The notes under the pieces are model-generated. The model saw only the letters and a list, made by a program, of their open reading frames with translations. It was not told the origin of the DNA and made no database searches. DNA of 64,000 nt from Podarcis filfolensis (Eukaryota). A program made the position numbers and the translations under genes. The stretch is taken from the NCBI GenBank assembly GCA_964270895.1, contig OZ185437.1; one strand, written 5' to 3'. Of the stretch, positions 8,426 through 33,480 are shown one piece after another (position 1 is the first letter of the stretch; every line of letters starts with the position of its first letter).

Positions 8426-8563
8426 TCAGTTCCTATGCAAGTGGTAGCCATTGAGTGCCCAGTCTTGAACTTCTCCACTGCTGAATAATGCAAAGAAGAT
8501 GGCTCCAAATAAGTTAATGGCAGCGGCGATATAGAAGACAGTCTGCCATTCTCCCACAGTATT
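8426..8563 (-). CDS. SLC17A5: Sialin exon 11, terminal coding part ([45 protein letters not shown])
   Basis: Acceptor tgccag|, TGA stop at 8428-8426. Confidence 0.96.
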
Positions 8564-9918: not shown

Positions 9919-10009
9919 ACTATGAGTTAGGCTTTTAGCAACAAGTGGTCCCACCATTCCTGGGATAGTGCCAAATGAATTTGTAATTCCAAGGAGAATG
10001 CCAGCATAT
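9919..10009 (-). CDS. SLC17A5: Sialin exon 10 ([30 protein letters not shown])
   Basis: Acceptor tcttag|, donor AGT|gtaagt, 91 nt. Confidence 0.96.
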
Positions 10010-11733
10010 CTAAGAAAATAAGAAGAAAAAATCAGCTGGTTCCCAATGCCATAGTGCCTTGAACTTCTTTCTGGTACTCAGGAACGATGGTAGGATTTTC
10101 ATTCCCTTGCAATTCACACACACACGTATATTATATAAAACTAGACATGTATGGGGTGGGGAGAGATTCTCAGCACAAGCTCAAATGTTTTGGCACTCCT
10201 AACATACTGAAACAAGACACCCCAGAAAGAATTTCACACATGATTCATCCACTTGTCCAGAGTGGATTAGGAGACATGCACAAACTTCTCAATGAGGTAT
10301 TTATGAGGGAAACAAAACCCAAGTGCTAAGTCACCCTCATACTTGGCTTTCGCACAGGGATTCACAGTGGGCAGGCAAGTGGCTGCTCTCTAAGTAAGCC
10401 CTTGTGTGGATACACTTTGCATAAGGGCAGTGCAATCTGGGAGGAACTGTAACTTTGCGACTTGCTTTCCTCTAATTTTATTTAAACACATACTGTATCT
10501 ATTTTGCCTTTTGCTTCTTAAATTTCAAAAAGCAATTCACAAACTGGAAGCATTTAAAAAATAATAATCTGTAAAACAACACAATCCTTAACAAACCACC
10601 AACCAGGCTGGAAAAGGTGTGAAGTTCAAAAAACTGGAAGGCAGAAAAACCGGAGCTCATTCTAGCTGGCATGTTAGAAATGCCATGACAAAATGTGCCT
10701 CGTGCACTTCCCTATCTGGTAATGTGAAGGAAAGGCAAAATGATACTCTGAGAAAGGATGCCTGGGGCAAGGCCAAAGCTCACTGGTGGAACACACACCT
10801 TGCAAGTTCCAAGTTCAGTTCAGGACATCCCCAGGTAGCGTGGGGAAGACCCCCCCAACTGAAACCCCAAAGAACCATTGCACAGCTTCAGTATATTAAT
10901 TACATACTTGTTGAATAAAGAAGCTGGCATTTATATGACCTTTGCTAACTTGGAACTGCTTAAACATTAATGACTTTATGAAGATGAATGCCAAAGAGGA
11001 AAAGCCTCACAGGATAGATGAGTATCTTATAAAGATCCATAAATCCCTTAGTGGTATAGCTCCCCCCCCCCAAAAAAAAATATATCTAAGCATTGCAATG
11101 GCATTGATATGCACTTTGAAAATAATGTCTATAGTACATCTGTCCCCCACAGGAGCTCTTCCCCATTACCTAAGTGTCAACCTATGCAAGTACCTCTAAC
11201 TATACCTTCAACAAGCAAATATCATGTGCTACAGAAACGCTGGTGGGTGGATGAGGGGAAGCAGGCAGAAAATATCAACAGCAAATTACACGCTGCAACC
11301 CTTTGCATTTCTGCGCAGAGGTCAGCCCCACTGAAGCCCTCTTCAGGCATTCTCTAGTCATTTTAATTAAACACACAAGTGGGAGGTGGGTACAGGGAGG
11401 TGAGCATTTTAGTTCTGCTCTCCCTTTTCATCCCCCCATTGCTGTTCCAATTACCCTCCACAAGAGACAGGCAATCTTCTGAAGCAGGGAACATGCTGTA
11501 TACCTGGAGGCTCCCTGCACATTTTAGAAGCCTGGAAGATTAGGATTCTATAGGATTTACTCCCAGAGTTAAGCGTGCATTGGTAGGATTGCAACTTAAG
11601 GCTGCCACACAAAGGAGTTGAATTAACCCAAATCAGTGACTGAAGAAAAACACAGACAAGTACTGTAGTTATTTAATTCACTGTTTCAGGGAATCTTGTT
11701 TGCAAAAACGCACACTCAATCATGAATACTTAC

Positions 11734-11881
11734 GATGGTGCAATATCGAGGTGATTGATGCTGTATCCAGATGTTGAAAAACCCCCTAGTGTTGTGGATA
11801 TGGTTACAAATGCAACAGCCATTTCATAATCGCAGCCTATGAATCCAGCTGCTACAAGGAAAACCGCAGGTCCAATCATTC
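11734..11881 (-). CDS. SLC17A5: Sialin exon 9 ([48 protein letters not shown])
   Basis: Acceptor attaag|, donor TC|gtaagt, 148 nt. Confidence 0.97.
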
Positions 11882-12158
11882 CTTAATAAAAACATATCAG
11901 AAACCTTACCTTCATGGGAACTCAAATTTTGTTTATTCTTTGTGCAATATTGCAGTGACTTTTTATTTAAAAAAACAACTGGTGGTTCTCAGCTCTTGAT
12001 CTATAAACAAAACAACAGTCCTTTGCTGATCCCTGGGCAAGACTGCCTAAAGCAACCAGTGGGTGGGGTCCCTGCCATAATATGATTGCAAGGGAATGAG
12101 AAGGTGAGCACATGCTCCTTGGAATTCACAAGATGGAGCAGGAATTTGCCCTGTATCC

Positions 12159-12407
12159 CAGGGGTCAGCAAACTTTTTCAGCAGGGGGCCGGTCCACTGT
12201 CCCTCAGACCTTGTGCAGGGCCAGACTATATTTGGGGGGGGGAATGAATGAATTCCTATGCCCCACAAATAACCCAGAGATGGATTTTAAATAAAAGGGC
12301 ACAATATACTCATGTAAAAACACGCTGATGCCTGGACCACCCGCGGGCTGGATTTAGAAGGCGATTGGGCCGGATCCGGCCCCTGGGCCTTAGTTTGTCC
12401 ACCCATG
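12159..12407. mobile_element. hAT-type MITE, related to 2051-2371
   Basis: Termini CAGGGGTCAGCAAAC / GTTTGTCCACCCATG with 8-bp TSD CTGTATCC (12151-12158, 12408-12415). Confidence 0.85.
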
Positions 12408-12417
12408 CTGTATCCTA

Positions 12418-12756
12418 GGTAAAGGTAAAGGGACCCCTGACCATTAGGTCTAGTCATGGCCGACTTTGGGGTTGCGGCACTCATCTCGCTTTATTGGCCG
12501 AGGGAGCCGGCGTACAGCTTCTGGGTCATGTGGCCAGCATGACTAAGCCGCTTCTGGAGAACCAGAGCAGCGCACGGAAACGCCGTTTACCTTCCCGCCA
12601 GAGCGGTACCTATTTATCTACTTGCACTTTGATGTGCTTTCGAACTGCTAGGTTGGCTGGAGCATGGACCGAGTAACGGGAGCTCACCCCGTTGCAGGGA
12701 TTCGAACCGCCGACCTTCTGATCGGCAAGTCCTAGGCTCTGTGGTTTAACCCACAT
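12418..12756 (-). mobile_element. Sauria SINE, slightly 5'-deleted
   Basis: Reverse complement of the 2816 copy, 16-bp TSD CCCATGCTGTATCCTA (12402-12417, 12757-12772). Confidence 0.92.
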
Positions 12757-13571
12757 CCCATGCTGTATCCTAACCACATCTAAAGAGCCTGTCGCACCAA
12801 GGCACAGGAAAGCAAACAGGTAAGAGATGCAGGAGCACCTGGAAACTCAGAAGCTGTAAGGGATAGATGAAAAAAAAGGTAGTGGCCCTGGTAGAGTGCA
12901 ACGTTGAAGGCACACAATGGTGGAAAAACACACTTGTAAGGGTATAGGAGTTCCTACTGACACAAGAAGTGCCATTGATCAGTAACAAGAGCAAATGCTC
13001 TGCATGTGAATGTTTAGAGCCTGACATCTCCAGTTAGAAGGAATTCGGGAAGCAGAACTAGGATAACTCTTCTGGAGCAGACAACGCTGGGCTCGATGGA
13101 CTAACATACAAGGCAGCTTCATGTATTCCTAGGGATTAATACAAGATCGGTTCAAGACATGCAGCATTGCTCTCAAGCATTTTGCACATGCTGAATTAAT
13201 GTATTCAATCCCCGGGAAAGAGATCATTGCAGTGGCACTCAGAGCCTAGAATCTGTCCCGAGATCCACATTACTGCAAAATGTCCCAGAGTAACATTATG
13301 AAAGTATTTTGTCTGGCCTACTGTAATGCTACAAGATGGGTGGAAAGTAAGCAGCCTAAGTGAGAAATAAGCAACTATTTTTGCATGGAACTTTTAAAGC
13401 AGAATCTAGTTTCAAGCTAGCTAAGAAATGTTTTAATCTCTGTGTCTTTTGTGCTGCTGTCTTATGGACTGACCATCATTACTTTTTGATAAAAAACTGA
13501 AAATAAAGAGAGGAAAGGCCCAGCAATTATTCTACATTGTGCTGCCACCTAGTGAACAAACTATATCACTA

Positions 13572-13817
13572 CAGTGGTACCTCTGGATGCGAACGGGATC
13601 CGTTCCGGAGCCCCGTTCACATCACGAGCGGAACGCAACCTGCGTCTGCGCGGGTCGCGATTTGCTGTGTCTGCGCATGCACGTGACGTCATTCTGAGCG
13701 TCTGAACATGCATGAGCGGCGAAACCCAGAAGTAACCCATTCCATTACCTCTGGGTTGCCGCAGGATGCAACCTGAAAAGATTTAACCCAAAGTGACTTT
13801 AACCTGAGGTAAGACTG
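13572..13817. mobile_element. Tc1/mariner-type MITE, second subfamily
   Basis: Termini CAGTGGTACCTC / GAGGTAAGACTG with TA flanks. Internal sequence differs from the 1560 family. Confidence 0.8.
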
Positions 13818-15182
13818 TATTCAATTTGGAGATGCATGCTTTTGCCTGAGCTATTTTATCCATGACAAAATGGAAGCTACTGGTACTTTAGATGTTCATT
13901 AAAACCAACAAACCTGTTGTAGTTGCTTATTTAATAACCCAACTGGGTAATAAAAACGTCACTAGGGAAATATCAAACACATCCCGTTCTGATCAAGACT
14001 TATCATTTTATAATACAATGAAATAGCGAAGGACATTTTTGCACAGGACAGGATGGAGAAAGAACAGAGCAGAAGAACAGTTGATTAAAATATCTGCATT
14101 TTAAATCATCATTTTTTGTGAAGTTACCTCAGCTTCAGTTTATATAATTGCCATTTCAGGTTGCTTCGAGAGCTTTTCAGAAGTTATTGGCACATGGAAA
14201 GGGCAAGTGAGAACATGGAGAGAACATGGAGGATGGATTGAGATGGCACAGCTCAGTAGTGGAACGCCTACTTCAAAAGCAACTCTCCCAGGTTCAGATC
14301 CCTGCTATCTGGGGGGGGGGGGGAGGAGTGAGTGGCGCTGAGAAGCACATGGTAAGACACTGCCAATCAGTGTAGACAATACTGAGCTAGATGATGTAAC
14401 AAGGGGCTGACTCAGTGCCGGTTGATTTCAGAGAAGAGACCAAGCCAGAATGGATGCTTAGCAGCTTCATTGCAAACAAGAAAAGCAGCATGACTCACTG
14501 CCTCATTTGGACACAGGGCCACCTATAGCGGGAACAGCAGTATAACAGTTAACTCTCCATTACACTCAGTTAAGGCTCCTTCCTATGAACCTATAACCAA
14601 CCAGTAAGGGATAAGGAACAAGGGCCCTGTCCAAAGCTATTAACATCTGGTCCAATGCTGGTTTCATCTCTCAGCTGTTAGAAGCATTGCCCAAGTGTGT
14701 CCAGGCACCGGTTTTCTCCAAAAGCCCAAGGGCACATGAAGAGCATCTCATCAAAGTTATTCTTTGGCTTTCCTAGCCACAAAATCCTGGGAGCAGCAGC
14801 CAGAAAGGGCCTGACCCTTTCATAGCCACTATGCATACCCAGCCAGGGATGCTTACCATTTACTGAGAGCAAAAGCAGCAAAAGTGAAGTGTTTATAAAG
14901 TCCTTGGTGGGCCACCATACAAGGCTGAGTTGAGGAGCTGCATTTGGTATTATGGAACACAAGTTGCGCAGGAATGCTCTTGTTACTACTGGGAATATAA
15001 GCGTATATAAAATGCACCTGCCAGAAAGAATCCGGCAGAAGAATTGCAGCTTTCTTTACAACAGGAAATAATTCAAAACTGAGGGAGGGGGCTTATTAAA
15101 GCAGGTAAAAACATTGTACAAGCTCGACAAAACCCCATTTAAACTACAAGCCAAATTGAAAACAAGCACATTCTTTCCTTAC

Positions 15183-15315
15183 CTATCAGGGTAAATGTTT
15201 TGCGAACACATACGGTGGGCATGTTTTGCTTTTCCCGCAAATAATCAGCAAATTGACCAGATAGAATGATACAAATCCAGCAGCCAAAATAAGGCAGTGC
15301 AGACAAAAATCCATT
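15183..15315 (-). CDS. SLC17A5: Sialin exon 8 ([44 protein letters not shown])
   Basis: Acceptor gtacag|, donor G|gtaagg, 133 nt. Confidence 0.96.
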
Positions 15316-16864
15316 CTGTACAGAAAAAGAAAACCAGATTTAGGATGGGATGGGAACACCTTTCTTGTGCACGTATTTATTTATTTTCAAGATGAATATC
15401 TAAGTACAGAATAATAATAAAAAATGTCTTCAGCAGTACAAATGGGGTTGGGGACAGCTATTTAAAGGCTGTTTTGTACTGTCTGAAACAGCTGTTTTGT
15501 TGTAGTGTTTAATGGATACTGTACTGTAAGATAACCAGTGAGCATAATTGACAAGTCACACATTTTATGATAAAGGAAACTGACTTCCTTTCTAAGGATA
15601 TGGCAAAGTGATAAATTCTTGCAAGCTACAGTGGAAACACATCCTGAGTTATGAGACACGAGTATCTGGTTTAACAATAGCAGCTTTCCACCTATTTTCA
15701 GAGAAACACCAGAGGTTAACGGCCAAGTTAAAGGAGAAGACATCTGCCTGATTTGAGGCTGGAGTGGCAGCTAGAACTGCTTGTCAGTCCACCTGTCTTG
15801 GCTTAGATTCTTTTTACAGTGAGCAGGAACTGCAACAGCCACGTTCAGGCAAGGTGGCTCATTGTGGAAAAAAGTCTGAGAAACCCTTCAGGTAAGCAAA
15901 AGGATAGAGCCAGTGTTATGCCTCCAGATGTCTGTAGACTCCAACTCCCATCAGCCCCAGCTAGTGTGGCCAATGGTCCAGGATGATGGGAGATGTCGTC
16001 CAATATTTGGAGGGGAACCAGGTTGGCTCTCTTTGTTATATATATCAAGACCAATTCTATTTCCACTGAGGTAAACTGCAAAGCACTGGTATCAGATGAA
16101 TCTGATTTAAAAGGAGATGCTTAAAGGGCTGGTTCACACTACAGGGATTTCTCCATTTAATTATGCACCTTGCAGACAAGGGCTAGCGTGCTTTAGGCAG
16201 TTCATGAAGAGTTAACAGCCAACTCTGTAACTGAAATTTCTGGAAAATATTACCATAAGGGTGTGATTACTGTTGAAGATCCACTGTAGGAATGCCCATG
16301 GCAATCAGAAGAACTGATGCTCCGCATAGCATCTGTGTCACTCACACACTCACTCACTCACTGAGGGGGCATGTTTATAAATCAGCAGACCCACCAAAGG
16401 GGATTCAGACTCTGACTTGGAGTGAAGCCCTCCCAGTCAGCAACTCTGCTCAAGGTTAAGGAACCCAGCTTGATGCTGCACCCAGCAGACTGGGCGACTT
16501 ATCCGAAGGTTCTCCCAAGAACAGCAGCAGAATGTTCCAGGAGGAAAAGGAACAAGGAGCCAGAGAAACAGCTTCAATTCCTTCCTCCTGGGAAAAAGAA
16601 CCCTCTGGTGCCCATTCGTTTGTCACAGGTGTTCATTCTCAGAGAGCCTGTTAAATGTGCAGCCAGCAGAACAAAAATTGCAATTGCTCTGAAGGAATTT
16701 ACATAGCAACCTTTAGAATTGAAGCACAAGGTAAAGGAGTTGGATAGGCTGCTCTTCACAGCTGCTTCAGCCTAATTTTAGCAAATGCTCTTGAATGAGC
16801 AGCACATTTTTAATTAAGCCGTTAACCTTAAAATGCAAAACAGGGAACAGCGATGGCACCGTAA

Positions 16865-16867
16865 TGT

Positions 16868-16924
<57 letters not shown>
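16865..16924. repeat. Compound microsatellite (TG)n(AG)n
   Basis: Read directly from the sequence. Confidence 0.95.
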
Positions 16925-16929
<5 letters not shown>

Positions 16930-17403
16930 AAAAAGGACAATTCTCTCTCCTCTGATAGTAAATTGATCTTTAGTTGCACGTTCAAATTTCATTATGCTCA
17001 CTAAAAAGTGGCTAGAGTTTTAAGAGCTGCACTTCCAGAAGTAATATTGCTGGTTAAATTAACAGAATTATTTATGGACTGCAGGGGGGTGGGGAAGTGT
17101 TGGATACCCAAAGCCTCCCCTTCTCTCACTAGAATGGATTTCCCAGGAAAAACACAAACACGTGGCCTTGTGTTCCTGTGACAGGTGACAAAGATGCCAT
17201 TTGATATTCTTGTTCCTAAAATCTCTCAGCACTGCCAGATACTCCACATACAGAGCTGACTTCAAGGCCGCATACTGAATACCAGTGTGTGGTATAAGCC
17301 ATGAACCAGCGATTTGGGATCGCATTCCGACTCAGCCAAGAGGCTAACAGAGAAAGCCTATGCATGTCTACTCAGAAGCAAGTCACATTAGACTCCATGG
17401 GAC

Positions 17404-17487
17404 TATTGTATTTTAATATTCTGTTGGAAGCCGCCCAGAGTGGCTGGGGAAACCCAGCTAGATGGGCGGGGTATAAATAAATTATTA

Positions 17488-17523
<36 letters not shown>
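17404..17523 (+). mobile_element. L2 LINE 3' terminal fragment with (TTA)n tail
   Basis: GCCCAGAGTGGCTGGGGAAACCCAGC..GATGGGCGGGGTATAAAT matches the 3' end of the L2 at 53200-53250. Confidence 0.8.
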
Positions 17524-17525
<2 letters not shown>

Positions 17526-17731
17526 TTGCATGCGAGTAGACCTATGTAGGGTTGTGCTGTAATTGAATGACTCTGTGCAGCCCTGACCTCACGGTCAGGA
17601 GGCTATTTCTGTAGCTTCGCCCCACTGGGTGCTTAGGTTCTGACTGTAATTCCTACTGAAAGCCAAGTTTACGATCTAGCCTAAGTCACTTCAGGGTAAG
17701 TTTTGTAACTGGATAACACAGGGTATCTTAC

Positions 17732-17890
17732 CTCCTGCACATCAAACCTCAGAATTTCCTTCATGTAAGTAGGCAATAGGGTAAGGAGTGTGTAGAAAGT
17801 CCAGTTATAAGAAAAGTGTGCTACGACGATAGCCCAGAGTGGAAGTGACGTCAGTATGGCTCCCCAAGGGATGGATTTCTGAGTAGAAAG
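17732..17890 (-). CDS. SLC17A5: Sialin exon 7 ([53 protein letters not shown])
   Basis: Acceptor ctttag|, donor GAG|gtaaga, 159 nt. Confidence 0.97.
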
Positions 17891-18543
17891 CTAAAGAGAA
17901 GGAATTAAATTCACATAGATGTTCTTTAAAAAAATATTGAATCACACTTCTTAAAACTTCAAAGAGGATTTTTTCTAAAGAGCTTGTTCCTGCCAGTCTG
18001 CACTCTTAAGCATAATGGTAGATCCCTTAATGCAGACGCTCAAGGAGATCAGGAACAAGCTATGGGATTCATGTTCCTCCTTCAGTCCCTTACCTACTGC
18101 ATGCAGGTATACCCACACTTAACCACGGTTGGTGCACAGCATGGGTGAACTTCTGTTTAACATTAGGAGGACAAAACATTTGTCTGAGTGGTGACTTTTC
18201 AGGGATTCTGCTGCTGGGCATTCTTGTTCCCTTTCTCACCCAAATGTTCTTTTTAGCTGGCTTTTTCGTCTGCTGGAACCACCTCTTTTATACAGTTCTG
18301 TTCCATCTGTTTTATGCATTTATAATTGCAACGGTTCTAATTATAATTGCATGTTTTATTGATGTATCCCGCCTTGGGACCTTACGGCGAAGGACGGATA
18401 ATAAATCTTATAAAACAACAAAATGTTACTGAGCTTTAAAAGCATTTTTCAAGGACCTCTTTGTCCTTTAAATACAATAGTGGATGTATATCACCCCAGT
18501 ACGTCAACAGAAATGAGCAAAGGCTTGATCAAAAAGTACACAC

Positions 18544-18662
18544 CTGATCTGTAAGGGAGGAGAGGATGTATTCCTTTTCTGCATGAGAAATTCTCTTGTG
18601 TGTTTCTGGTGTGTCACTAACTATCAACATCCAGAAGATGAACCACAGCACACCTAGGGCAC
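18544..18662 (-). CDS. SLC17A5: Sialin exon 6 ([39 protein letters not shown])
   Basis: Acceptor tttaag|, donor CAG|gtgtgt, 119 nt. Confidence 0.95.
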
Positions 18663-19053
18663 CTTAAAGTGAAAACAACAACGCTTATGGTCAAGGAAAT
18701 GGCAGCCATGAGACTTTAAATTTGCAAGCACTGCTACAACCCACCAGGGTGGTGCTGTGTTGCTCTCGCTTGGCTTCCCAATACCTCACATTACTGCCCC
18801 TTACCAGTAGGGAGAAGGGCAGGGGGCAAGACAGTGGGCAGCTCAGCACACTGTGGGCACGGCGGCAAAGCCAGCCTGAGACTCCTTTACCCCCTCTCTC
18901 CTCTCGGCAAGTTATAGTGATGTTTGGTGCTGGGAAACTTGGGAGAACAGGACTGCCCCACCCACAGTGCCTTGCCAGCTGCTATTGCAGAGCATCTGAA
19001 GATCACCATGAAATGTCTCCCAAGCCAGAGCTACCTGTGGATCCCACAGGTAT

Positions 19054-19752
19054 GTAGTAACCAGCCAACCCCACCCTCAAAGGTAAATGAAAGAGATCGT
19101 TCCAACATAACAAATGTGTGGGTGCATATCCAGAGGATCACTTAAATGTGAAGGGGTTGCGGTGCTGATCTCGCTTTACTGTCCGAGGGAGCCGGCCTAC
19201 AGCTTCCGAGTCATGTGGCCAGCATTACTAAGCAAAGCAGAGCAGTGCACGGAAATGCCATTTACCTTCCCGCTGGAGTGGTACCTATTTATCTACTTGC
19301 ACTTTGACGTGCTTTCGAACTGCTAGGCTGGCAGGAGCAGGGACCGAGCAACGGGAGCTCACCCCGTTGCGGGGATTCGAACCGCCGACCTTCTGATCGG
19401 CAAGTCCTAGGCTCTGTGGTTTAACCCACAGCGCCACCCGCGCTAAGGATACATCAAATGCATAAAAACATGCCCGTGTGGTGGGGGGCCATGGCATGAC
19501 CCTCGGTGACATCAGGAAGAGAGCCTATAGTTGGATTAGCATCAACAGGCTTCCCCTACTGGTGGTTAACCCCTCCTCAGACTCACCCCTCTACGAGTGG
19601 GTGGAGTCTAATGTTCCGTGGTCCAATGCCTAAGCCAATACCTTCTCACATGCTGTAATCAATAAAGTTGTGGCCTTTACCTTACCCATTAACCTTACAT
19701 TCTGTGTCCACGTGTCTTTATTCCCCAAGCGGGGATCGGGTCCTTGAATCAC
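19054..19752. mobile_element. Candidate solo LTR with a nested SINE
   Basis: TGT start and CA end, LTR-like 3' part with CAATAAAGTTGTGGCC. No convincing TSD. Confidence 0.35.
19151..19442 (-). mobile_element. Sauria SINE, 3' end deleted
   Basis: Reverse-complement match to the 2816 copy. The tail is missing. Confidence 0.9.
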
Positions 19753-19799
19753 AATCAGGCACAAAGTGTTGTAGAAATACACACGAAAAGCTTTACAAT

Positions 19800-20103
19800 G
19801 ACACAGGACTGAAAAACAATCTTCCAGCTGTTTTGTTGTTTTTTTTAATTGTCCTTAGGATTTGGGGTATCTTACTTGTACCTATGACAAATTGGAGTAC
19901 CACTGGATTCTCCTGAACCATATTTAAAAGTTATATATGATTATTAAAAAGATGGAGGGGAGGCGGAAGAGAGAGAAAAGAGAGTAACCTAATTCACACC
20001 TTAATACTGGTGATTAGTTGTATGAGGAGGGGGGGGGTTGAGAAAGTTTGCTCATTGCTATTTTGTTTTGTATATTTGAAAATGAATAATTAAAAAAAAA
20101 AAA
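19800..20103 (+). mobile_element. Probable L1-type 3' end with poly(A) tail
   Basis: Purine-rich, G-run, T-rich and A-tail organisation ending GAATAATTAAAAAAAAAAAA. Confidence 0.35.
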
Positions 20104-20149
20104 TACAATCTTTACTCAACTGAATGGCATTTACAGTGAAAACACTTAC

Positions 20150-20236
20150 CAAATATGTAGAACACATAAATCCAATTCATATAAAAACAGATCAAGCCAG
20201 ACAATGGAAGAGACACAACAGTTCCTAGCTGTGCAC
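20150..20236 (-). CDS. SLC17A5: Sialin exon 5 ([28 protein letters not shown])
   Basis: Acceptor ttctag|, donor G|gtaagt, 87 nt. Confidence 0.96.
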
Positions 20237-20317
20237 CTAGAAATTAAAGTTTTATTTTAAAATAATAATCACTTTATTATTTTTACCCCGCCCATCTGGC
20301 TGGGTTGTCCCAGCCAG

Positions 20318-20319
20318 CC

Positions 20320-20358
<39 letters not shown>

Positions 20359-20359
20359 A

Positions 20360-20404
<45 letters not shown>
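20318..20404. repeat. Compound tetranucleotide microsatellite (CTGT)n(CTAT)n
   Basis: Read directly. It abuts a minus-strand L2 3' fragment (~20270-20318). Confidence 0.95.
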
Positions 20405-20662
20405 CCCCTAGCAGAACATAGACTGCTCAAGGATTAAAATTACTAGGCTTTGAATACACCTAGGTTACGGATAAACATGGTTTAGTGGCAAGGCATGCAC
20501 AGCAATGAACCATGCTTAATGGGTAGCTGCAGGAGTATGGGGGTGGGAGCAGAAATGGAATGCATAATCCTGTGGCCTGTTCCCAACCGTTATACCACAG
20601 TTAAAAGAGATTAGTGCTGCATCTTCATTGGCTAGACTTGAGCATTTTTAAAAGCATCTCAC

Positions 20663-20750
20663 CTGCATATGAAATACTAAGAAGTTTACTGCGTTCCAGT
20701 GGAGGAGCCCAACAGGACCACATGGCATGCATGGCAGGAAATGTGACACC
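20663..20750 (-). CDS. SLC17A5: Sialin exon 4 ([29 protein letters not shown])
   Basis: Acceptor ttccag|, donor G|gtgaga, 88 nt. Confidence 0.96.
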
Positions 20751-22348
20751 CTGGAAAACACATTTGTTTATAGTACAACATATCTTTCAAGAGTAAAATG
20801 ATTTGGCCAAGACTCACTTCAATAAAACATCTCCAACGTAGCCTGGAGAAAGTACCAGTTGCATTAGTACAAAGCTATTTTCTGAACAAAACGCACATAG
20901 CTCCTGGGCAATTAAGCAGAACTAATTCCTTGCCTGCTTCAATTCTTCAGCTGAATATGCTTTGTGGACATAACAATTATGCTGAACTTTTGGTTTCTGC
21001 ATAGAAACAGCAGCACAAATATTTTGAAGTGGTGGTTTTCCCTCAGTTTGTATTATAAAATGCCAACATGCAAAGGAGGCCGGACAGCATGGCAGGGAAG
21101 AGTCCTCATTCTGCGGACAGACCAGGTTAAAAAAAACAACCAGATTCCCCTAAATTAAACCAGAAATCTAATAAAAACTATGTGAACTTTGAATAAAAAT
21201 GTTCATAAACAATTAAGTTTCAAAGAGGTCACAAGCATATTAAAGCATCATATTAAACCCAGGGAGCTAAGGGAAGGGCTGGATTTATGTTGCAATTCTG
21301 CAAGAGCACAGAATGTGGCAATGGGTGGAGAATTCAGCTTCCTGAAAATATTCTTTTCCGCATTTCCTCCCTTTTAACGAAGCTGTCCTATGAAGTTCTT
21401 TGCCTCTCACAAAGAAATAAAAACAACAAAAATCGCAGAGTAAATTATGTATAGTCAGAGAAATTAGGGAAAACTGCTCAACTTGCATAATTTATACAGT
21501 TGCAGGATTCAGGCTTTTGGTGCAAAATTTGGAATGCCCACACAAAGATTTTATTTTTTAACCCAGCCTATACACAACTGTTTAAGGGAGCATGCATAAG
21601 ACATTTTACATAACAAAATTTCAGTTATGTGCCAGGTCCACCCACCCTGGCACAACTTCCTACTTCCTTCCCCTCTATTCAAGCTCTGCAGATGCCATTT
21701 GATCAGTTGCACAGCCACAGAGGAACGGCATATCTTTCATATCAGCTCCTCACGTAGCCCTTAATATACCATTTCTCATTAACGTGGTGCTCTATGATCT
21801 TAACAATATGCTCGTCCTCACAATGAAGTCATAGAAGACATGCTCATTTTAAGGTGGGTGTAAGGAAAACTGGGAATGAGGAAGGAACCCTCAATTCTCA
21901 GATTCATGCCCATCTGTCTATCTGCTGGAAAAAAATATAAGAGCACGCAAGAGGCCAGTGGAACTATAACTGAAGCGGCAGCAATGGAAAACTCAAGTAA
22001 GAAAAGTGCTATTAAGAACACGAGCAGAGCCCAGCTAGATCAGACGAAGGTCCCATCTAGTCCAGCACCCTATTTGCAAAGTGCCCAACCAGATCCCTAT
22101 GGAGTGGTTGATCCCAACTTGGTGACTTCCAGGTGTTTTGGACTCCATTCACATCTGGGCACTGCCTGGCTAGAGCTGGGATTGACTGGAGTTGGAGACA
22201 TGCAGCATCTGGAAGATACCAAGCTGGAAAAGACTGACCTAATGTAATTTATCAACATTACAGGGGATTGTTAATGTACTTACAAAGTAATTGTTTTGAA
22301 ACTCTTAACAACAACAACAATTAAAGGGGGCGGAGAAGGAGAGATTAC

Positions 22349-22582
22349 CTCACCCAGGCCTTCCAAAGCTCTGACAGCTATGAGGTACCCGACTCCCATA
22401 TCTGCTGCCAAAGGTGTGAACAAGGTGAAAATGGCAGTGCCCAGGATGCCAAACCCCAACAGCTTCTTTCCGCCAAACTGGCGGGCAAGATATCCACCAG
22501 GAACCTGCGTAATGATGTAGCCATAGAAGAAGGAACCAAGGATCCAGCCTTGAGTATTTGCATCCCATGGATACTTTTTCCC
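22349..22582 (-). CDS. SLC17A5: Sialin exon 3 ([22 protein letters not shown]...ALEGLGE)
   Basis: Acceptor tttcag|, donor GAG|gtaatc, 234 nt. Visible inside ORF 22280..22609. Confidence 0.97.
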
Positions 22583-23574
22583 CTGAAAGGGAGGGAGAGA
22601 AAAAGACATGAAGGTCTGGTTTCCACCCCGCCACTTGCATCACAGGAAGATACAACAAAGGACTGCATGCTCCCCATCCAGCAACACTGCACACCTATCA
22701 GTGACATACATTGCTAACTGCAGAGTGGCTTACAAACTATATTTTCCACATGCCCGTCATGGACATGGGGAACTACGTGCTCATTTTTCATGGGACGCAT
22801 GGAAAGAACTCCCTATGTACATCCAAAGAGTGACCACATTGTTGGGGTTTTTTTAGATCAATGACATTAAAATATACATAGCTGGTTAATATCCTGCTAA
22901 TTGTTTTCATTCTGTCAACCAGGCTCCTAAAGCAAGCAAAGCCCAGTCACAGTGTCATAAAAAATAATCACATATCAACTGATTTCAAAGCCTTCTCCTC
23001 TTCTTTTCTTTATTTAATGTATGAACCACCACACTTGACAGACTTACAAACTTTAAACAACTATAGGCTGTACAATAAGTTTTTTTAAAAAAAACACCAC
23101 CCAAATTTACCTCATTTACATTATTGTGGTAGAGTCCAGGTTGGCCTGTACTATGTACAACATTGGAAGCTGCCCTATGACAAGTCAAACCATTGGTCTA
23201 TCTAGGTCATTATCGTCTATATTGGCTGACAGCAGTTCTCTAGGGTTGTCAGGGCATTATCCTAGGTTCCAGGGTGTTATCTTTTTATTTTCAGAACAGT
23301 AGCATCCATCACATCACACAGGAAGGGAGTGATTCTGTTGTGTATGTGTGATTCTGGAGGCAGAATGGAGGCAGCAAAAATCTATAAAGGGATTTGATGA
23401 GGACTGAATGTTACTTGCCTTAAACAAACACACTCCTACAAGAATTACTGTAAGGTAGGGTAGCCGTATTTTGAAAAGTGAAATTCTGGACACAAAAGTT
23501 GAGCCTTGGGGGGGGGGGCAAAGATGTTTTTAACCTATTTTCAAGAAAATTCACCAAAACCTATACTTCTGACA

Positions 23575-23692
23575 AGGGTTGCCACATGTCTGGATTTTCC
23601 TGGACATTATAGTGATTTCCACCCAGACGCACACCGATTCCAGTGGCCAAATCCCAGCAATTTCCAGGAAATTCCAGATGTATAGCAACCCT
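23575..23692. mobile_element. Short MITE with AGGGTTGCCA-type TIRs
   Basis: AGGGTTGCCACATGTCTGGA / TCCAGATGTATAGCAACCCT, imperfect inverted termini. Confidence 0.6.
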
Positions 23693-24303
23693 ATGTAAGG
23701 AGTCAGAGCTCAGATTGATTGATGCAGATAAAATAGTGGCATCATCTGAGCAGAATCTCTGTGATAGGAAGAACTTCAAAGGCTGTTTGAAGGCACAGAT
23801 CATGCAAAAGAATGCTGAGAGATAAGATATAGTCCTCTGATCATAACTGCTTTTAAAGATCTATTGGATAATTTCACAAGGGGTGCTGATTTAATGTTCT
23901 GCACAATCCTTTGTACGTTTATTCAGAACGTAGGAGTATGATTTCAATGGGTCTTACCAAATGAGGCTTAGTCCAAGGTAAGGCTGAAATCCTATACCTA
24001 CCTAACTGGGAGTAAAACCTATTAAAAATCACCTGGATTTACTTCTAAGTAAATGCCTCAGATTACACTGCAAGAGTATTTAGGTTGTGCCCACTGTTAC
24101 GTCATACTCTTTGAAATTAGTAGAGTGGGCTCATTGTGGACACCGTCCATTTGGTTTACTCTTAAGTAGAACTTAGTTGGATACAACCCTTTATTCACCC
24201 CCATCAATACTGGCATTCCGCCAGCTCTTGAAGAGATAATAATTTAAAACACATACCCTTTAAGACAGTTCACATTCTCAAAAGTAGATCTGGTAAAACT
24301 TAC

Positions 24304-24500
24304 CGTAGTGTTACGAGGAACAACTGGGGTAGAAGAATGTTCTTTGCACACATTTGAAGAAGTATTTTTGGTCAAGCTTGCATTTGATTCTACCATGTCC
24401 ACCAGGGCAACACTTAAATTGACACGAAGTGCATATAAGAGAAAGAATCCCAAGAAGGCCCAGACCGCTAAGCTGAGGCGAGCAGAGCAGCATATTGGCG
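24304..24500 (-). CDS. SLC17A5: Sialin exon 2 ([36 protein letters not shown]...RNTT)
   Basis: Acceptor ttttag|CG, donor ACG|gtaagt, 197 nt. Carries the conserved CCSAR and [10 protein letters not shown] motifs. Confidence 0.97.
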
Positions 24501-25565
24501 CTAAAAGAAAAAGTGATGCGCATTAAAAAGCGTTAATGTAAAAAAAAAAACCCACAACTCTGGCTAGCAACTATCTTTAACTGAAACAAAGGCAGAAGGG
24601 CCAGAAGTCTTGGCTTTTCCCCCAGACTCATTCTCATATAAGCCAAAATGCAGACAATGGACTAATTGGGGGACACACCACCAAAACCATCCAGCGTGGA
24701 CTGAGAATATTCAGTAGCCACAAAATGTTGAGTTGTCAGGTCACACCCACACTATACATTTACAGTATGTTGTTTTATGCCACTGTAACAATTATGGTTT
24801 GGCCCAAAGAATTCTGGGAACTCTAATTTGTTAAAGGTGCTGGGAATTGTTACGAGACTCCTATCCCCTCTCACAGAACTACAATTCTCAAGAGTTCACT
24901 GAGAAGCAGGATTGATCCATTGACTCCATGGTGTGGATGTGCTCTCTTGAAACTGTAGCCCAGGGATGGGAAAACATTTTGGCCGGGGTGGACGGCAGCT
25001 TGGTCAGCGCATTTCCCCCAGGTAAGTGTTGGTGAAGCAGCACCAAGCAAGATCAGACACTGCTCACCAGTTGATGGGCCAATCTGCTCTATGCAGGGGT
25101 CTGCTTCACCAGTGTGTTCTCTGCAGGGGATGTGCTGATGAAGCAGCCCCCAGCAAATTTGAACACCACCCATCAGGAGATGTCACCCACTGACAGGGAA
25201 ATGGCCTTGTGGACCAAGGCTGGCCTGCACGTCACGAGGGTCTCCACCCATTTTAGACTTTAACTCCCATCAACCCCCCAAAACTGGAGGGCACAAATTT
25301 GGTAAAGGCTGATTTACAGTAATCATGGCTTATCTATTAATTCACAAGCAGGAGAGTATATGTTTATGTATTGTTCAATTATTTCAGTTAGAATAAACAT
25401 GAACTTTAACCGTTTGCTAAAGGGATGTAATCTTTCATAAGATCACAGGGTTGATTTATTTATGTAGCCTTATTAGGCACTTCAAGCCTTTACCAAGAAA
25501 CTCTAAGCTATTGGACACATCTGGTATGACAAAATGCGCCTGAGAAACAGAAGACGATATCCGTT

Positions 25566-25645
25566 TAAGTCATACTCAGAGTAGACCCACTGAAATCAAT
25601 GACCTTAAATTACTAAAGTTATGGGTCTACTCTGAGTATGACTTA
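25566..25645. repeat. Perfect 24-bp inverted repeat (hairpin element)
   Basis: TAAGTCATACTCAGAGTAGACCCA (25566-25589) and its exact reverse complement (25622-25645), 32-nt loop. Confidence 0.9.
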
Positions 25646-26331
25646 GTGGTGCATTACCCACAATAGTTTCTTAGCTCTGCTAAGGAATCTCAAATGACCA
25701 ACCCCCAAAAGCTTGCAGGTATGGCCTGAAGGCGTTTCATAAGAAATTATGCTATATTTTTTGATAAATTGTGGTGAGCAAACCATATACGGAGCAGGAC
25801 TGACTACCAGTGCCCCATTCTCAGCTGTTGTTAGATTCCAACTCCCATTAGTCCCAGCCAACATGGCCAACAACATCTAAAGGGCCACAGTTTCCATATC
25901 ATAGTACAAAGGAATAAAAATAGTGGGGTAAAACGCTCAAGCAAATGACAAGAGAAGTGCGCTCAATACATGCTCACTCATGGATACAACATACATACAA
26001 ACAAAGCAAAGTGTGCATTCTGGCAGCTACTCAAGAGTGCCCACTCCCCCAAATCCAACCCTAAAGGGGAAACAAAACTCACACCCCAGTATTATGTCCA
26101 CATGTCTTAGCATATACTTTTCTGTCATGAAATACAAATAAACCACAACATGTTCACCAAAATCTCACTTTAAATATACAAAAAATATTACTCATATTTG
26201 CTTCGCTGCATGATTATTATACTATGGAAAAGATTGTGTGATTCTCTCCCCCCCCCCAAACATCTTTTTTAAAAAATATAACACGCCACAACACAACTTC
26301 AGATCCACAAGGCACAATATTAAATTCTTAC

Positions 26332-26386
26332 CATTAACAGCCCCGGGAGCTACTTCTTTCACAACCAACCTTGTTTTCGAAGACAT
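26332..26386 (-). CDS. SLC17A5: Candidate alternative first coding exon of sialin (MSSKTRLVVKEVAPGAVN)
   Basis: ATG with G at -3 and an in-frame TAA three codons upstream. 55 nt ending in G|GTAAGA, phase 1, which is compatible with exon 2. No transcript evidence is available. Confidence 0.45.
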
Positions 26387-28596
26387 TTCCCTTTAATTTC
26401 CTAGTTACTGTTGTGCTGGATCATCGAAATGCTCCCATGATCTGAACGGAAAGCTCCTGCAACATTTTTAGTTTGAGGAAGTTGCCCTGAATATTTATTA
26501 CTGCAAATGAGGCACAGTAGACATGGCATGGCAAGTTTATTATCTTGCTGTTCTAGTGCCCAACGTTAAACAGCAAAGGAGCCTTCACTGGTGTTAATAA
26601 CATCCTTAGTCTTCTGCCTTTCTGCAAGACCACCTTAAGCTATTGTTGCTTTCACAAACCACTTCTGGCTTTCTTCCAGATCAACCTCTGCCTGGTAGAT
26701 GTGGAATATCCTGTTCTGCAGCTCTGCTTCCCTCAGCAACCCGCCTTTTGCCATTCACGTCACATCACACTGCTCTCAGTCAATAGCCTCTCTCTAACCC
26801 CACTGCCACGTAAACACTAAATGCCAAATTCTGCATTTCAGCCATTGCCATTCGATTTCTTACTTAACTATACACACAGTATTTTTGAATTGAATGTTTA
26901 GCATCAAATTCATTTATTTACCTTTCTCAGCTGTTAGTGCAAGTTTACTACTTAGGAAACACCACTTTCAACCAACTTTTACTTGTTCCCTGTCCCCCAA
27001 GCAAATGAAATCAGGGCTGTACAGATGCAGAGTAGGGGAGAAGAATAGGAAATTGCTTGCTGCTGAGAAAACCACCTTGGTTTTTGGAGGGAGTCGGAAT
27101 AGGTGTGCTGCTTTAATCTCTCACCATTAAAAAAAAACAGGTCTGGATGTACACTGTGACAAGTATTTGGGTCTTCGACATGATCTCTGACAACTTTTAT
27201 CAAACATGGGGAAGTAAAACTGACAATGCTGTGCTGGGCAGGGAGCAACACACAACCTTAAATTTCAACATGATCAGCCATTGCCAGAAAGGACAGGACT
27301 GTAATCTTGCTTTTAATTGCCTTTTTAAACCCATGTTTTATGGAAGGATAAACGAACACTACTGTGACTGAGCTACATATGGTGGGATCACAGATCCTTA
27401 TAATAATGGTTTTTAATTATTTATTTATACGGATAGCTTCCTTATCACTTTGCTACATTTTTTCTTCTGTGCTGTTTCCTTGTCTAATAACAGACTGTCC
27501 TGTTTAGGTGTTGTTGTTTCTTTAAAGGATATTTTATGCAATTGTATAACACTTATGCCACAAGTGCAAAAGGAAACCAATTTTAAGATTTCCAATGTGA
27601 ACATCTAGTGCAAGTAGAAATGGACAAAGGCAGCTGACTGAAAGGGATTAAGAGCTATCTTGTTTGATTGGATCAAAGTCCAGCATTCTGTTTCCATCCA
27701 GATGTCTCTGGAAGCGCAGAAATAAGGCAGGAAGCCAGGTTAGGAACTACGTTGCAACCTGATCAATAAATCATACGAGTTTTAGTTAAATCATCAATCA
27801 ACTCAATTTTGCAGAATTTCTGAAGCAATATTGTTTGCTTCACTTTTTTTAAAAAAGAATGCACATGTATTTCCTAGTAGGCATCAACTTGTAAGAAGCA
27901 TCCAGCCCCCTTGTGTGAGAAAAGGAAGAATACCTCTTTTAACAAGATTTTATATGCATTTGTATTGAAAAGAATATATATTTAAATTTTGCTGCCCAAT
28001 TAATTTTCAGTTTATTAAACATTTTAAACAGATCAATAAATTAAACAAAGCAGCCCTAGATATGGTCATTCTCTTGCATCTAGTAACTGGATGTATACTG
28101 TCTCTCAAGATGCTAGTTCATGTACCCGCATGTACTGTTTTCTAAGTTTAATCGTTAGGAACATGTCCTTCTCTTCAAATCAATGTAAATAGATCTATAC
28201 AAACAGCACTTGCGCTAAGGTTCCAGGTGATTTTTCAGGATAAATACTGCTGGTCAGAAATGAATAAACACCAAGTGGAAGTTTAATCTATGGGACAGAG
28301 CTTTCGGCTTGGTTCCAGGGCCAATCCTGCCTCCTCAAAGAATGGACTGGGTGACTTTGAGTAAGTCATGAGCTCAGTTGGGCCAGCAGGAGAGACACAA
28401 CGGCAGTATTTGCATGTCATGGTAGTTTGTTCCTGGCTTAGTGGTTTGAGCAAAACAAACCAAGGTCCCCAGTTTGTATGCAATGCTAAACCAAGGTTTG
28501 TGCTTTGTTCCCGCCATGGGCTGGTAGGAAGGAACCAAGCAGACACAGTTTGCTAAATACACCACTGGAGGAGGTGGGAATGAGCTCCACTAATTA

Positions 28597-32539: not shown

Positions 32540-33480
32540 CCGCGAAAGTATAATAAACCCGCTAGCTTTCACGGTGCCACAAGACCTCTCCCCGCGTTTG
32601 CTGTCGCCGACCACCCCTCTGAAGCTGGTCGCCGTCGTCGATGGACTCGGTGATACTCATGGCGACAGACGGCAGTCCTGGGAAGTCAGGACTTCCTTCC
32701 GAATAAAGGGGGATAATGCTGCGTTTGCTAGCTACTGGCAAACCTGCACAGGACCGGGACTGTTAAGACACCTCTCCACAGGGTACTGGAGACGGTGGAG
32801 GCGCCCCCACAGAAATGTCCCTCTCCCGCCAACTCGCCTACACCCCACAGCTCCTCAAAGCGAGGGGAACTGGCTGCTGGAGACAAAAAGAGGGCGGGAG
32901 GATCACGACTGAGGTGTGCGCTGGGGGGCAAGCGGTCCCTCCAGCCGCTGCTCTCACCCGCCTTGCCAGTGGGCTGGGCTTCTCGCTGCAGGAGCGGGGT
33001 ACGGTCCTCTTCTTCCTCCGCCTCTTCGGGTTCCGGGGTCTGCATGCTCCCCTTCAGGGCAAAAGCAAACGCGAAACCAGGGCTCCCAAGACGAACCCAG
33101 CCCGTCTGTCGGCGGCTTCCCACCAAAGTCAGCTGCCAGAAAAGCCTAGGCAAGCAGCAGGCACGTGACTTCGAGCCGGGCGGAAGTCCCGCCGCTACCA
33201 TGATTCGGCGGCTCGGCGCCTATGGAACGGGTTTGTTTTCCTTCCCCCGCCCTCCTCCTCGGCCATCTTTGCTGCGGGCAGAAGCCTTTCTGCTGATTGG
33301 TTGCTGGGGTAAAAGGCGGCGGCTGAGGATGCCGCTGCCTAAGGCAGCCAATGGAAGGAAGCCCCTCCGGCGTCGCCCAAATCGCCGCTGGATTCCTCCC
33401 GGCGTTGACTCGTGATGTGCAGGCGGAAGAACAGGACTTTATCTCTGGGTAGCTTGCCGCAGATAAGCGAGGTTTTATGA
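32540..33480. promoter_or_regulatory. CpG island / SLC17A5 promoter
   Basis: GC- and CpG-rich. Contains E-box GTCACGTGCC (33160-33169, CLEAR-like), ETS GCGGAAGT (33180-33187), GC box (33244-33253), YY1-like GCCATCTT (33262-33269) and CCAAT boxes at 33296-33300 and 33348-33352. Boundaries are approximate. Confidence 0.8.
32958..33045 (-). CDS. SLC17A5: Sialin exon 1 (MQTPEPEEAEEEEDRTPLLQREAQPTGKA)
   Basis: Contains the DRTPLL dileucine motif. Donor G|GTGAGA is phase 1. The exon lies in a CpG island. The start codon choice (33045 vs in-frame 33201) is inferred from homology. Confidence 0.9.

What the first reader, a model, noticed from the sequence alone, without database searches (positions are those of the whole stretch)
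26332..26386. Candidate alternative first exon giving a sialin isoform without the lysosomal sorting signal
Seen: in intron 1 on the minus strand, ATG TCT TCG AAA ACA AGG TTG GTT GTG AAA GAA GTA GCT CCC GGG GCT GTT AAT G is followed by a consensus donor GTAAGA. It has a purine at -3, an in-frame TAA just upstream, and phase 1, which exon 2 requires. Splicing gives [26 protein letters not shown]..., 482 aa with all transmembrane segments intact. Established: the N-terminal DRTPLL dileucine motif in exon 1 targets sialin to lysosomes, and mutating it redirects the transporter to the plasma membrane. Inference: an alternative internal promoter could encode a natural cell-surface sialin (sialic acid, nitrate or other anion transport) in lizards. 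A start codon, donor and correct phase can coincide by chance in an 8-kb intron, so this is unproven.
Basis: partly seen in the sequence, partly recalled or inferred. Interest (0 to 1): 0.75.

Follow-up and report, generated by a model that had tools for sequence, protein, structure and literature searches.

The report
Conserved alternative first exon of sialin
The short ATG-to-donor stretch in intron 1 is a real, transcribed and very old alternative first exon of the sialin gene. It swaps out the N-terminus that carries the lysosomal sorting signal. Gene annotation of related lizards, snakes and birds already lists it, but no held paper studies what the isoform does.

Summary
On the minus strand, ATG 26386, an in-frame TAA at 26395-26393, 18 codons plus one base, and the donor GTAAGA at 26331-26326 are all present, in the phase exon 2 (24500-24304) needs.

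The pattern alone is not beyond chance: simulated introns give 0.9 such sites. Independent evidence shows it is real.
- **RNA.** The junction 26332 to 24500 occurs in a raw RNA-seq read and in a transcript contig from a second study, both from a close relative.
- **Annotation.** The same N-terminus (MSSKTRLVVKEVAPGDVN joined to APICCSAR) heads 482-aa "sialin isoform X2/X5" models in Podarcis muralis, Lacerta and Zootoca. Diverged versions occur in an anguid, agamid, anoles, geckos and snakes.
- **Conservation.** An orthologous exon is found in birds and a turtle. ATG, open frame and phase are kept in all nine genomes aligned. The GT donor is kept too, with G before it in eight. Coding indels are multiples of three.

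The 18 residues contain no [DE]xxxL[LI] motif, unlike canonical exon 1 (DRTPLL). An internal promoter is likely. Translation and cell-surface localisation remain inferred: there are six upstream ATGs in the leader and no codon-position bias.

The feature is already annotated elsewhere, but I found no paper on its function.

The parts
26332..26386 (-). Coding part of alternative first exon 1b: ATG plus 17 codons plus 1 base (phase 1), giving MSSKTRLVVKEVAPGAVN
   Evidence: Sequence. RNA junction at 26332. Orthologous annotated N-termini.
26326..26331 (-). Splice donor GTAAGA of exon 1b
   Evidence: The joint 24500/26332 with GT..AG ends on the minus strand appears in run X41 (raw read) and in an X5 contig. 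All 9 species aligned keep GTAAG or GTAAA after the exon; G precedes it in 8, C in the snake.
26393..26395 (-). In-frame stop TAA three codons upstream of the ATG (TAG in the related organism A)
   Evidence: The 26393 T>C difference is. In 6 of the 9 aligned species a stop lies 1-2 codons before the ATG; Elgaria and the snake have TAT, and the turtle's TAG is out of frame.
26387..26676 (-). RNA-supported 5' leader of exon 1b, holding six upstream ATGs whose short ORFs all end before the main ATG
   Evidence: The X5 contig spans 26332-26676 joined to 29 nt of exon 2. Run X41 has a depth island at 26200-26799 in the same orientation as exons 2 and 3. Upstream ATG list.
26476..26482 (-). ACTTCCT block about 96 nt upstream of the ATG; CTTCCT is kept in 7 of 9 sauropsids. 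It may be an ETS-type promoter element (inference).
   Evidence: Alignment; sequence.
24501..26331 (-). Intron removed between exon 1b and exon 2 (1,831 nt)
   Evidence: Joint 'skips 1831'.
24304..24500 (-). Exon 2 (APICCSAR... and the first transmembrane segment), shared by both isoforms
   Evidence: The exon 2-exon 3 joint is. 100% tblastn match to P0313.
32958..33045 (-). Coding part of canonical exon 1 (MQTPEPEEAEEEEDRTPLLQREAQPTGKA plus 1 base). The DRTPLL dileucine motif is at 33006-32989.
   Evidence: The flanks have CpG-island character.
22348..22582 (-). Exon 3
   Evidence: Joint 22581/24303 (cut +1) and the X1 contig.
8429..26386 (-). Full span of the 482-aa exon-1b isoform coding sequence (11 exons)
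   Evidence: tblastn of P0313 covers residues 1-482.

Best explanation
The window carries the SLC17A5 (sialin) gene of a Podarcis-like lacertid on the minus strand. Positions 26332 to at least 26676 form an alternative first exon, 'exon 1b'. It is most likely transcribed from its own CpG-poor promoter inside intron 1. Its strong donor (ATG|GTAAGA) is spliced to the normal acceptor of exon 2. Translation from ATG 26386 would give a 482-aa sialin. In it, the 29-residue N-terminus of exon 1, which holds the DRTPLL dileucine signal, is replaced by 18 residues with no [DE]xxxL[LI] motif. All transmembrane segments, exon 2 onwards, are unchanged. Shown here: the sequence, the splice junction in RNA, orthology to annotated isoforms, and conservation of ATG, frame, phase and donor across sauropsids. 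Inferred: a separate promoter, translation from this ATG, and escape from adaptor-mediated lysosomal sorting towards the plasma membrane or another compartment. That last step is by analogy with the engineered human L22G/L23G mutant.
For: RNA. The joint 24500 to 26332 (skips 1,831 nt, GT..AG on the minus strand) is seen in one raw read of the RNA-seq run X41. It is also seen in a 374-nt contig of run X5, from another study: 29 nt of exon 2 plus 26332-26676. X41 shows a discrete depth island at 26200-26799. It has the same mate orientation as exons 2 and 3, and the intron bins on either side are at zero.

Annotation. 482-aa isoforms start MSSKTRLVVKEVAPGDVN|APICCSAR in Podarcis muralis (P0313, P0323) and Lacerta agilis (P0320). 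Longer or shorter models in P. raffonei (P0324) and P. lilfordi (P0321, P0311) have the same start. Zootoca (P0189) starts MSLKTRLVVK.... Diverged versions occur in Elgaria, Pogona, two Anolis species, Paroedura and six snakes. 482-aa forms occur in birds.

Genomic orthologs. Exon 1b lies between exon 1 and exon 2 in Zootoca, Elgaria, Anolis, a gecko, a snake, two birds and a turtle. A squamate nhmmer profile hits only that site across the whole turtle locus (E=1e-8). A bird+turtle profile hits only that site in the gecko (2e-5), Elgaria (6e-5), Zootoca (2e-3) and the window (0.03).

Coding signs. The ATG is invariant and the frame is open in all 9 genomes. The two coding indels are -6 and -9 nt. 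The GT donor is kept in all 9, with G before it in 8, and there is a purine at -3 of the ATG. All 11 exons of the 482-aa isoform map to the window. Loss of the dileucine pair sends human sialin to the plasma membrane (bioRxiv 10.64898/2026.04.20.719580).
Against: RNA support is thin: one raw junction read and one contig, both from a relative about 1% diverged, not from the window's own animal. Contigs and a filter for human-like reads prevent any estimate of usage relative to exon 1. Run X1 holds an unspliced contig across the donor (26284-26783), at the depth of its intron background. The confirmed leader contains six upstream ATGs, thirteen back to 26968, which would dampen initiation at 26386. 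Variable sites are spread evenly over codon positions (15/13/14 in 7 species; 10/11/10 in 5 squamates). Conservation continues 200-300 nt upstream. The constraint could therefore be on promoter or RNA sequence rather than on the peptide. There is no CpG island and no 5'-end data, so the start site is not mapped. No protein evidence is available.
Confidence: 0.75

Rival explanations
1. Exon 1b is a real, conserved alternative promoter and first exon, but it acts at the RNA level. It would give tissue-specific transcription, with upstream ORFs throttling translation. Protein would then start mainly at a later Met, as in the annotated 429-aa MVESNASL... forms, or not at all. On this view the 18-codon ORF is a tolerated by-product.
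For: There are six upstream ATGs in the RNA-supported leader. There is no third-position excess of substitutions. Nucleotide conservation covers the upstream 200-300 nt as strongly as the ORF. 429-aa isoforms starting inside exon 2 are annotated in Podarcis, Zootoca, Paroedura and snakes.
Against: The ATG is invariant in 9 of 9 genomes and in about 20 annotated proteins spanning squamates, birds and a turtle. The frame is open in every one, coding indels are multiples of three, and phase 1 is always kept. The upstream ATGs are not conserved: three species have none within 120 nt. All the upstream ORFs in the window end before the main ATG, which allows re-initiation.
Confidence: 0.17
2. The stretch is an internal cassette exon included between exon 1 and exon 2, not a first exon.
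For: One bird model (Columba guinea, P0263) carries the orthologous peptide in frame after exon 1. The upstream end of the exon is not mapped in the window. One X1 contig (26787-26968) has 16 unplaced letters at its upstream end.
Against: In the window an in-frame TAA sits three codons before the ATG, and 6 of the 9 species have a stop 1-2 codons before it. Inclusion after exon 1 would therefore truncate the protein. No joint into the upstream side of the block was reported. No AG acceptor stands at 26968. Nearly all annotated isoforms begin at this ATG.
Confidence: 0.05
3. It is a chance coincidence of ATG, open frame and donor, with occasional splicing noise.
For: The pattern alone is expected about 0.9 times per intron of this size. 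Two other sites in the same intron match it equally well.
Against: The same junction appears in two studies. Orthologous exons with conserved ATG, frame, phase and donor occur across sauropsids, and profile searches hit only this site in whole gene loci.
Confidence: 0.03

Closest known systems
RefSeq/Ensembl models 'sialin isoform X5/X7' of Podarcis muralis (XP_028578612), 'isoform X2' of Lacerta agilis (XP_032999140) and Zootoca vivipara (XP_034965498)
   Same: Same exon, same junction to exon 2 and same 482-aa length. The N-terminus is MSSKTRLVVKEVAPGDVN, with L3 in Zootoca. All 11 exons map to the window.
   Different: The window has Ala (GCT) where these have Asp at residue 16. These are automatic models, and no functional study was found.
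Bird 'sialin isoform X2/X3/X4' (Passer domesticus XP_064268493, Parus major XP_015476262, Poecile, Dryobates, Melanerpes)
   Same: An 18-residue first exon in phase 1, between exon 1 and exon 2, with donor G|GTAAGA, a stop just before the ATG and no dileucine motif. It is linked to the squamate exon through turtle and bird nhmmer profiles.
   Different: The peptide is only 22-33% identical (MSLKSELAIDVGPKTASQ). The squamate-only profile did not hit the two bird loci directly.
Engineered human sialin L22G/L23G sorting mutant
   Same: It lacks the N-terminal dileucine signal while keeping the whole transporter core. It is delivered to the plasma membrane and is transport-active (bioRxiv 10.64898/2026.04.20.719580).
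   Different: It is a laboratory point mutant. Here the whole N-terminal tail is replaced naturally through an alternative first exon. Localisation of the natural isoform is untested.
Mammalian alternative N-terminus (Saccopteryx XP_066109771 MAFDSNPASEDAFRA|PVCCSAR; Nycticebus XP_053459553)
   Same: A first exon inside intron 1, in phase 1, that replaces the dileucine-bearing tail.
   Different: It lies only about 570 nt upstream of exon 2 in the bat. It has no detectable similarity to the sauropsid exon (nhmmer found nothing at E up to 100). It is probably an independent origin or has diverged beyond recognition.

Membership tests
Alternative first exon of SLC17A5 (annotated 482-aa sialin isoform) | Transcript junction from the exon's donor to the exon 2 acceptor | tested here: met
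   Joint 24500/26332 in X41 (raw RNA-seq read, 24-nt side) and in an X5 contig (29-nt side).
Alternative first exon of SLC17A5 (annotated 482-aa sialin isoform) | Orthology to the exon used in annotated isoforms of related species | tested here: met
   17 of 18 residues are identical to the Podarcis muralis and Lacerta models.
Alternative first exon of SLC17A5 (annotated 482-aa sialin isoform) | ATG in frame, no stop, and phase 1 matching exon 2 | tested here: met
   also true in all 9 genomes compared.
Alternative first exon of SLC17A5 (annotated 482-aa sialin isoform) | Own transcription start (not spliced from exon 1) | tested here: inconclusive
   The contig runs 290 nt upstream of the ATG without a joint. 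The depth island ends near 26800. There is a stop before the ATG and a conserved upstream block. There are no 5'-end data, and contigs cannot show starts.
Alternative first exon of SLC17A5 (annotated 482-aa sialin isoform) | Translation of the isoform | not testable with these tools
   No ribosome-profiling or proteomic data are at hand. Upstream ATGs argue for reduced efficiency.
Sialin / SLC17 major facilitator transporter | Full set of coding exons for the 12-helix core | tested here: met
   P0313 residues 19-482 map at 85-100% identity per block. Orthologs carry PF07690.
[DE]xxxL[LI] dileucine lysosomal sorting signal | Acidic residue at -4 and an LL or LI pair in the cytosolic N-terminus | tested here: not met
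   Exon 1 has DRTPLL. The exon 1b peptide has none: SKTRLV has Ser at -4 and LV, and this is not conserved in birds. So the isoform lacks the signal, as claimed.

The most novel reading that the evidence does not exclude
Exon 1b may be an ancient, sauropsid-wide promoter switch, older than the split of squamates from turtles and birds. It would produce a sialin that escapes lysosomal sorting and works at the cell surface or in another compartment. Mammals carry an analogous exon with no detectable homology. If so, isoform choice rather than mis-sorting would explain non-lysosomal sialin activities such as the proposed plasma-membrane nitrate uptake and vesicular loading. No held paper was found that describes such an isoform.
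Probability: 0.4. Interest if true: 0.65.

Novelty: already known. Interest (0 to 1): 0.4.

Why it matters
Sialin is treated as a lysosomal exporter whose N-terminal dileucine pair fixes its address, yet plasma-membrane and vesicular roles are also reported for it. A natural isoform that drops exactly that signal would give a simple, testable route to non-lysosomal sialin. This one has been kept, with ATG, frame and splice site intact, across squamates, birds and a turtle. For genome annotation the result is ordinary: the exon is the ortholog of one already modelled in related species. The value lies in two points. The isoform is deeply conserved. And no paper in the held library addresses it.

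Tried and rejected
- **Exon 2 peptide search.** It returned only short read-through fragments from genomic contigs, none from squamates, so it said nothing about isoforms.
- **Bacterial promoter and terminator scan.** It does not apply to a vertebrate gene and was disregarded.
- **Contig look-ups with the 482-aa isoforms.** These failed because only a gene's longest product is indexed. I used the X1 isoforms instead.
- **The 16 unplaced letters beyond 26968 in an X1 contig.** I considered a splice acceptor there. The sequence shows no AG at that point, so I did not take it as a junction.
- **Codon-position test for amino-acid constraint.** It gave no signal.
- **Squamate-only nhmmer profile against two bird loci.** No hit. 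The link to birds rests on the reciprocal bird+turtle profile, the turtle hit and the shared anatomy.
- **Sauropsid profiles against a bat locus.** No hit, so I do not claim homology with the mammalian alternative exon.
- **Relative usage of exon 1b versus exon 1.** This could not be measured. Exon 1 lies outside the 6-kb limit of the single reads call, contigs carry no expression levels, and reads resembling human sequence are silently filtered on conserved exons.
- **Big protein search.** I used it only to obtain a full-length sialin id. No contiguous window reference could reach full-length relatives, and the novelty claim depended on whether such isoforms exist.

Full report
**Observation**

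The ATG is at 26386-26384, with G at -3. An in-frame TAA lies at 26395-26393. Eighteen codons (MSSKTRLVVKEVAPGAVN) plus one G end at 26332, followed by GTAAGA.

The surrounding gene is sialin (SLC17A5) on the minus strand.
- Canonical exon 1 runs from ATG 33045 to 32958 in phase 1, encodes DRTPLL at 33006-32989, and has the donor GTGAGA.
- Exon 2 is 24500-24304 and begins CG CCA ATA TGC TGC (APICCSAR) after a pyrimidine tract and AG.
- Exon 3 starts at 22582.
- Splicing 26332 to 24500 keeps the frame.

**Is the pattern more than chance?**

No. I scored donors with a simple weight matrix whose frequencies I recalled from memory, so they are approximate. The 8,457-nt intron has three donors at least as good as this one, and all three have an open phase-1 ATG upstream. 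Markov simulations give 0.9 such sites per intron, and 58% of simulated introns have at least one. The region is single-copy within the window and has no CpG island, unlike exon 1.

**RNA evidence**

Runs that look like transcriptomes of a closely related organism hold both exon 2 and part of the candidate stretch. I laid one raw RNA-seq run and three contig sets on 22200-28199.
- A joint between 24500 and 26332 skips 1,831 nt, with GT..AG ends on the minus strand.
- It is seen in one raw read of X41 and in a 374-nt contig of X5, from a different study. That contig holds 29 nt of exon 2 followed by 26332-26676.
- X41 shows an island of depth at 26200-26799. It has the same mate orientation as exons 2 and 3, and the intron bins on either side are at zero.
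- X1, which carries intron background throughout, has an unspliced contig at 26284-26783.
- The relative differs from the window at 26393, 26486, 26523 and 26558. The first change turns TAA into TAG, which is still a stop.

Counts are small, and a filter removes human-like reads from conserved exons. Usage relative to exon 1 therefore cannot be stated.

**Annotation in other species**

A full-length sialin id was obtained through the representative search and used for a word search. That search and two cluster look-ups show the exon is already modelled widely.

| Group | Species (protein id) | Exon 1b peptide |
|---|---|---|
| Lacertids | Podarcis muralis X5/X7 (P0313, P0323), P. raffonei X7 (P0324), P. 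lilfordi (P0311, P0321), Lacerta agilis X2 (P0320) | MSSKTRLVVKEVAPGDVN, joined to APICCSAR |
| Lacertid | Zootoca X2 (P0189) | MSLKTRLVVKEVAPGDVN |
| Anguid | Elgaria (P0310) | MSLKTRLVVKADASGDVK |
| Agamid | Pogona (P0337) | MSSKTRLIVKAAAPGDGK |
| Anole | Anolis carolinensis (P0336); A. sagrei (P0345) similar | MSSKTRLIVEDPGSDN |
| Gecko | Paroedura (P0312) | MSSEKRWVLKTDGHDAAN |
| Snakes | Six species, e.g. Pantherophis (P0351) | MNMKTRLVAKTEASLDVK |
| Birds | Several, e.g. Parus (P0294) | MSLKSELAIDVGPKTASQ |

Most of these are 482-aa isoforms. The window differs from its congeners only by Ala for Asp at residue 16. tblastn of P0313 covers all 482 residues in 11 minus-strand blocks of the window.

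**Genomic conservation**

I fetched gene loci for Zootoca, Elgaria, Anolis, Eublepharis, Erythrolamprus, Dryobates, Poecile and the turtle Emydura.
- In each, an orthologous block lies between exon 1 and exon 2.
- The ATG is invariant in all nine genomes. A purine stands at -3 and the frame is open to the donor.
- All nine donors keep GTAAG or GTAAA after the exon. G precedes it in eight; the snake has C. Phase 1 is always kept.
- The only coding indels are -6 nt (Anolis) and -9 nt (Emydura).
- Six of the nine species have a stop one to two codons before the ATG.
- A squamate nhmmer profile searched against whole loci finds only this site in the turtle (E=1e-8). A bird+turtle profile finds only this site in the gecko, Elgaria, Zootoca and the window, with E from 2e-5 to 0.03.

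The exon therefore predates the split of squamates from turtles and birds.

**Limits of the coding argument**

- Variable sites are spread evenly over codon positions: 15/13/14 in seven species and 10/11/10 in five squamates.
- Nucleotide conservation extends 200-300 nt upstream. It includes a CTTCCT block at 26481-26476, kept in 7 of 9 species.
- What is conserved is thus an ATG-initiated open frame of about 15-18 codons in the right phase, plus a promoter-like region. A particular peptide beyond the first eight or so residues is not conserved.
- The window's confirmed leader has six upstream ATGs. All their short ORFs end before the main ATG.
- Upstream ATGs vary between species, and three species have none within 120 nt.

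**Mechanism**

Shown:
- an alternative exon spliced to exon 2;
- an ORF that replaces the DRTPLL-bearing tail;
- an intact transporter core.

Inferred:
- an internal promoter;
- translation from 26386;
- loss of adaptor-dependent lysosomal sorting.

Mutating L22/L23 in human sialin delivers an active transporter to the plasma membrane (bioRxiv 10.64898/2026.04.20.719580). Sialin is also discussed as a nitrate transporter of salivary glands (for example PMC12721291). The exon 1b peptide has no [DE]xxxL[LI] motif. SKTRLV in squamates has Ser at -4 and LV, and it is not shared with birds.

**Comparison and novelty**

The feature is the ortholog of isoforms already present in public annotation of the same genus, so it is already known as a model. 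Text searches for sialin or SLC17A5 with splice variant, alternative promoter or first exon, and isoform plus sorting motif found no paper describing such an isoform. Its function appears unstudied in the held library.

Mammals have an analogous first exon (bat MAFDSNPASEDAFR, 570 nt upstream of exon 2). It has no detectable similarity to the sauropsid exon.

**Verdict**

- The promoter is likely.
- Translation and localisation are untested.
- Interest is moderate. The annotation is ordinary. The lead is a deeply conserved natural isoform without the sorting signal that has not been studied.

Noticed in passing
window 37185-37248 (minus strand): A second alternative first exon lies about 4 kb upstream of canonical exon 1. 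It encodes MMTNPEASGMDIITPDNWKQH plus 1 base, with donor GTAAGC, in phase 1. It matches the N-terminus of a Podarcis muralis UniProt/Ensembl model (P0334), which joins it directly to exon 2. That isoform would also lack DRTPLL.
   Followed up: partly
window 32907-32957 (minus strand): An alternative donor 51 nt downstream of the exon 1 donor would add GESSGWRDRLPPSAHLS in frame, with C|GTGATC at 32907/32906. This extension appears in the annotated Podarcis isoforms P0190, P0192 and P0194. It keeps the dileucine motif.
   Followed up: partly
window 28707-29301: A GC-rich minisatellite in intron 1 has a 108-nt unit in 5.5 copies at 88% match. It produces long spurious open frames on the minus strand.
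   Followed up: partly
window 24806-24849, 25568-25610, 25821-25870: Short stretches in the exon 1b-exon 2 intron have very high RNA depth on both orientations, with many different loose ends in all four runs. They are probably fragments of an interspersed repeat expressed from many other loci, not sialin exons.
   Followed up: no
L009:13468 (Saccopteryx bilineata locus): A mammalian alternative first exon (MAFDSNPASEDAFR plus 1 base, followed by GTAAG-like sequence) lies about 570 nt upstream of exon 2. It is shared by a bat and a loris at the protein level (P0231, P0309, P0266) and is unrelated in sequence to the sauropsid exon. It also removes the dileucine tail.
   Followed up: partly
window 24304-24500 (Met in exon 2, MVESNASL...): Several squamate annotations list 429-aa sialin isoforms starting at this internal Met (P0315, P0286, P0314, P0319). 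These would lack the first transmembrane segment and probably come from transcripts with non-coding first exons.
   Followed up: no
window 40000-42000: A GC-rich block (GC 0.53) lies about 7 kb upstream of sialin exon 1. It may be the CpG-island promoter of a neighbouring gene. I did not examine it.
   Followed up: no
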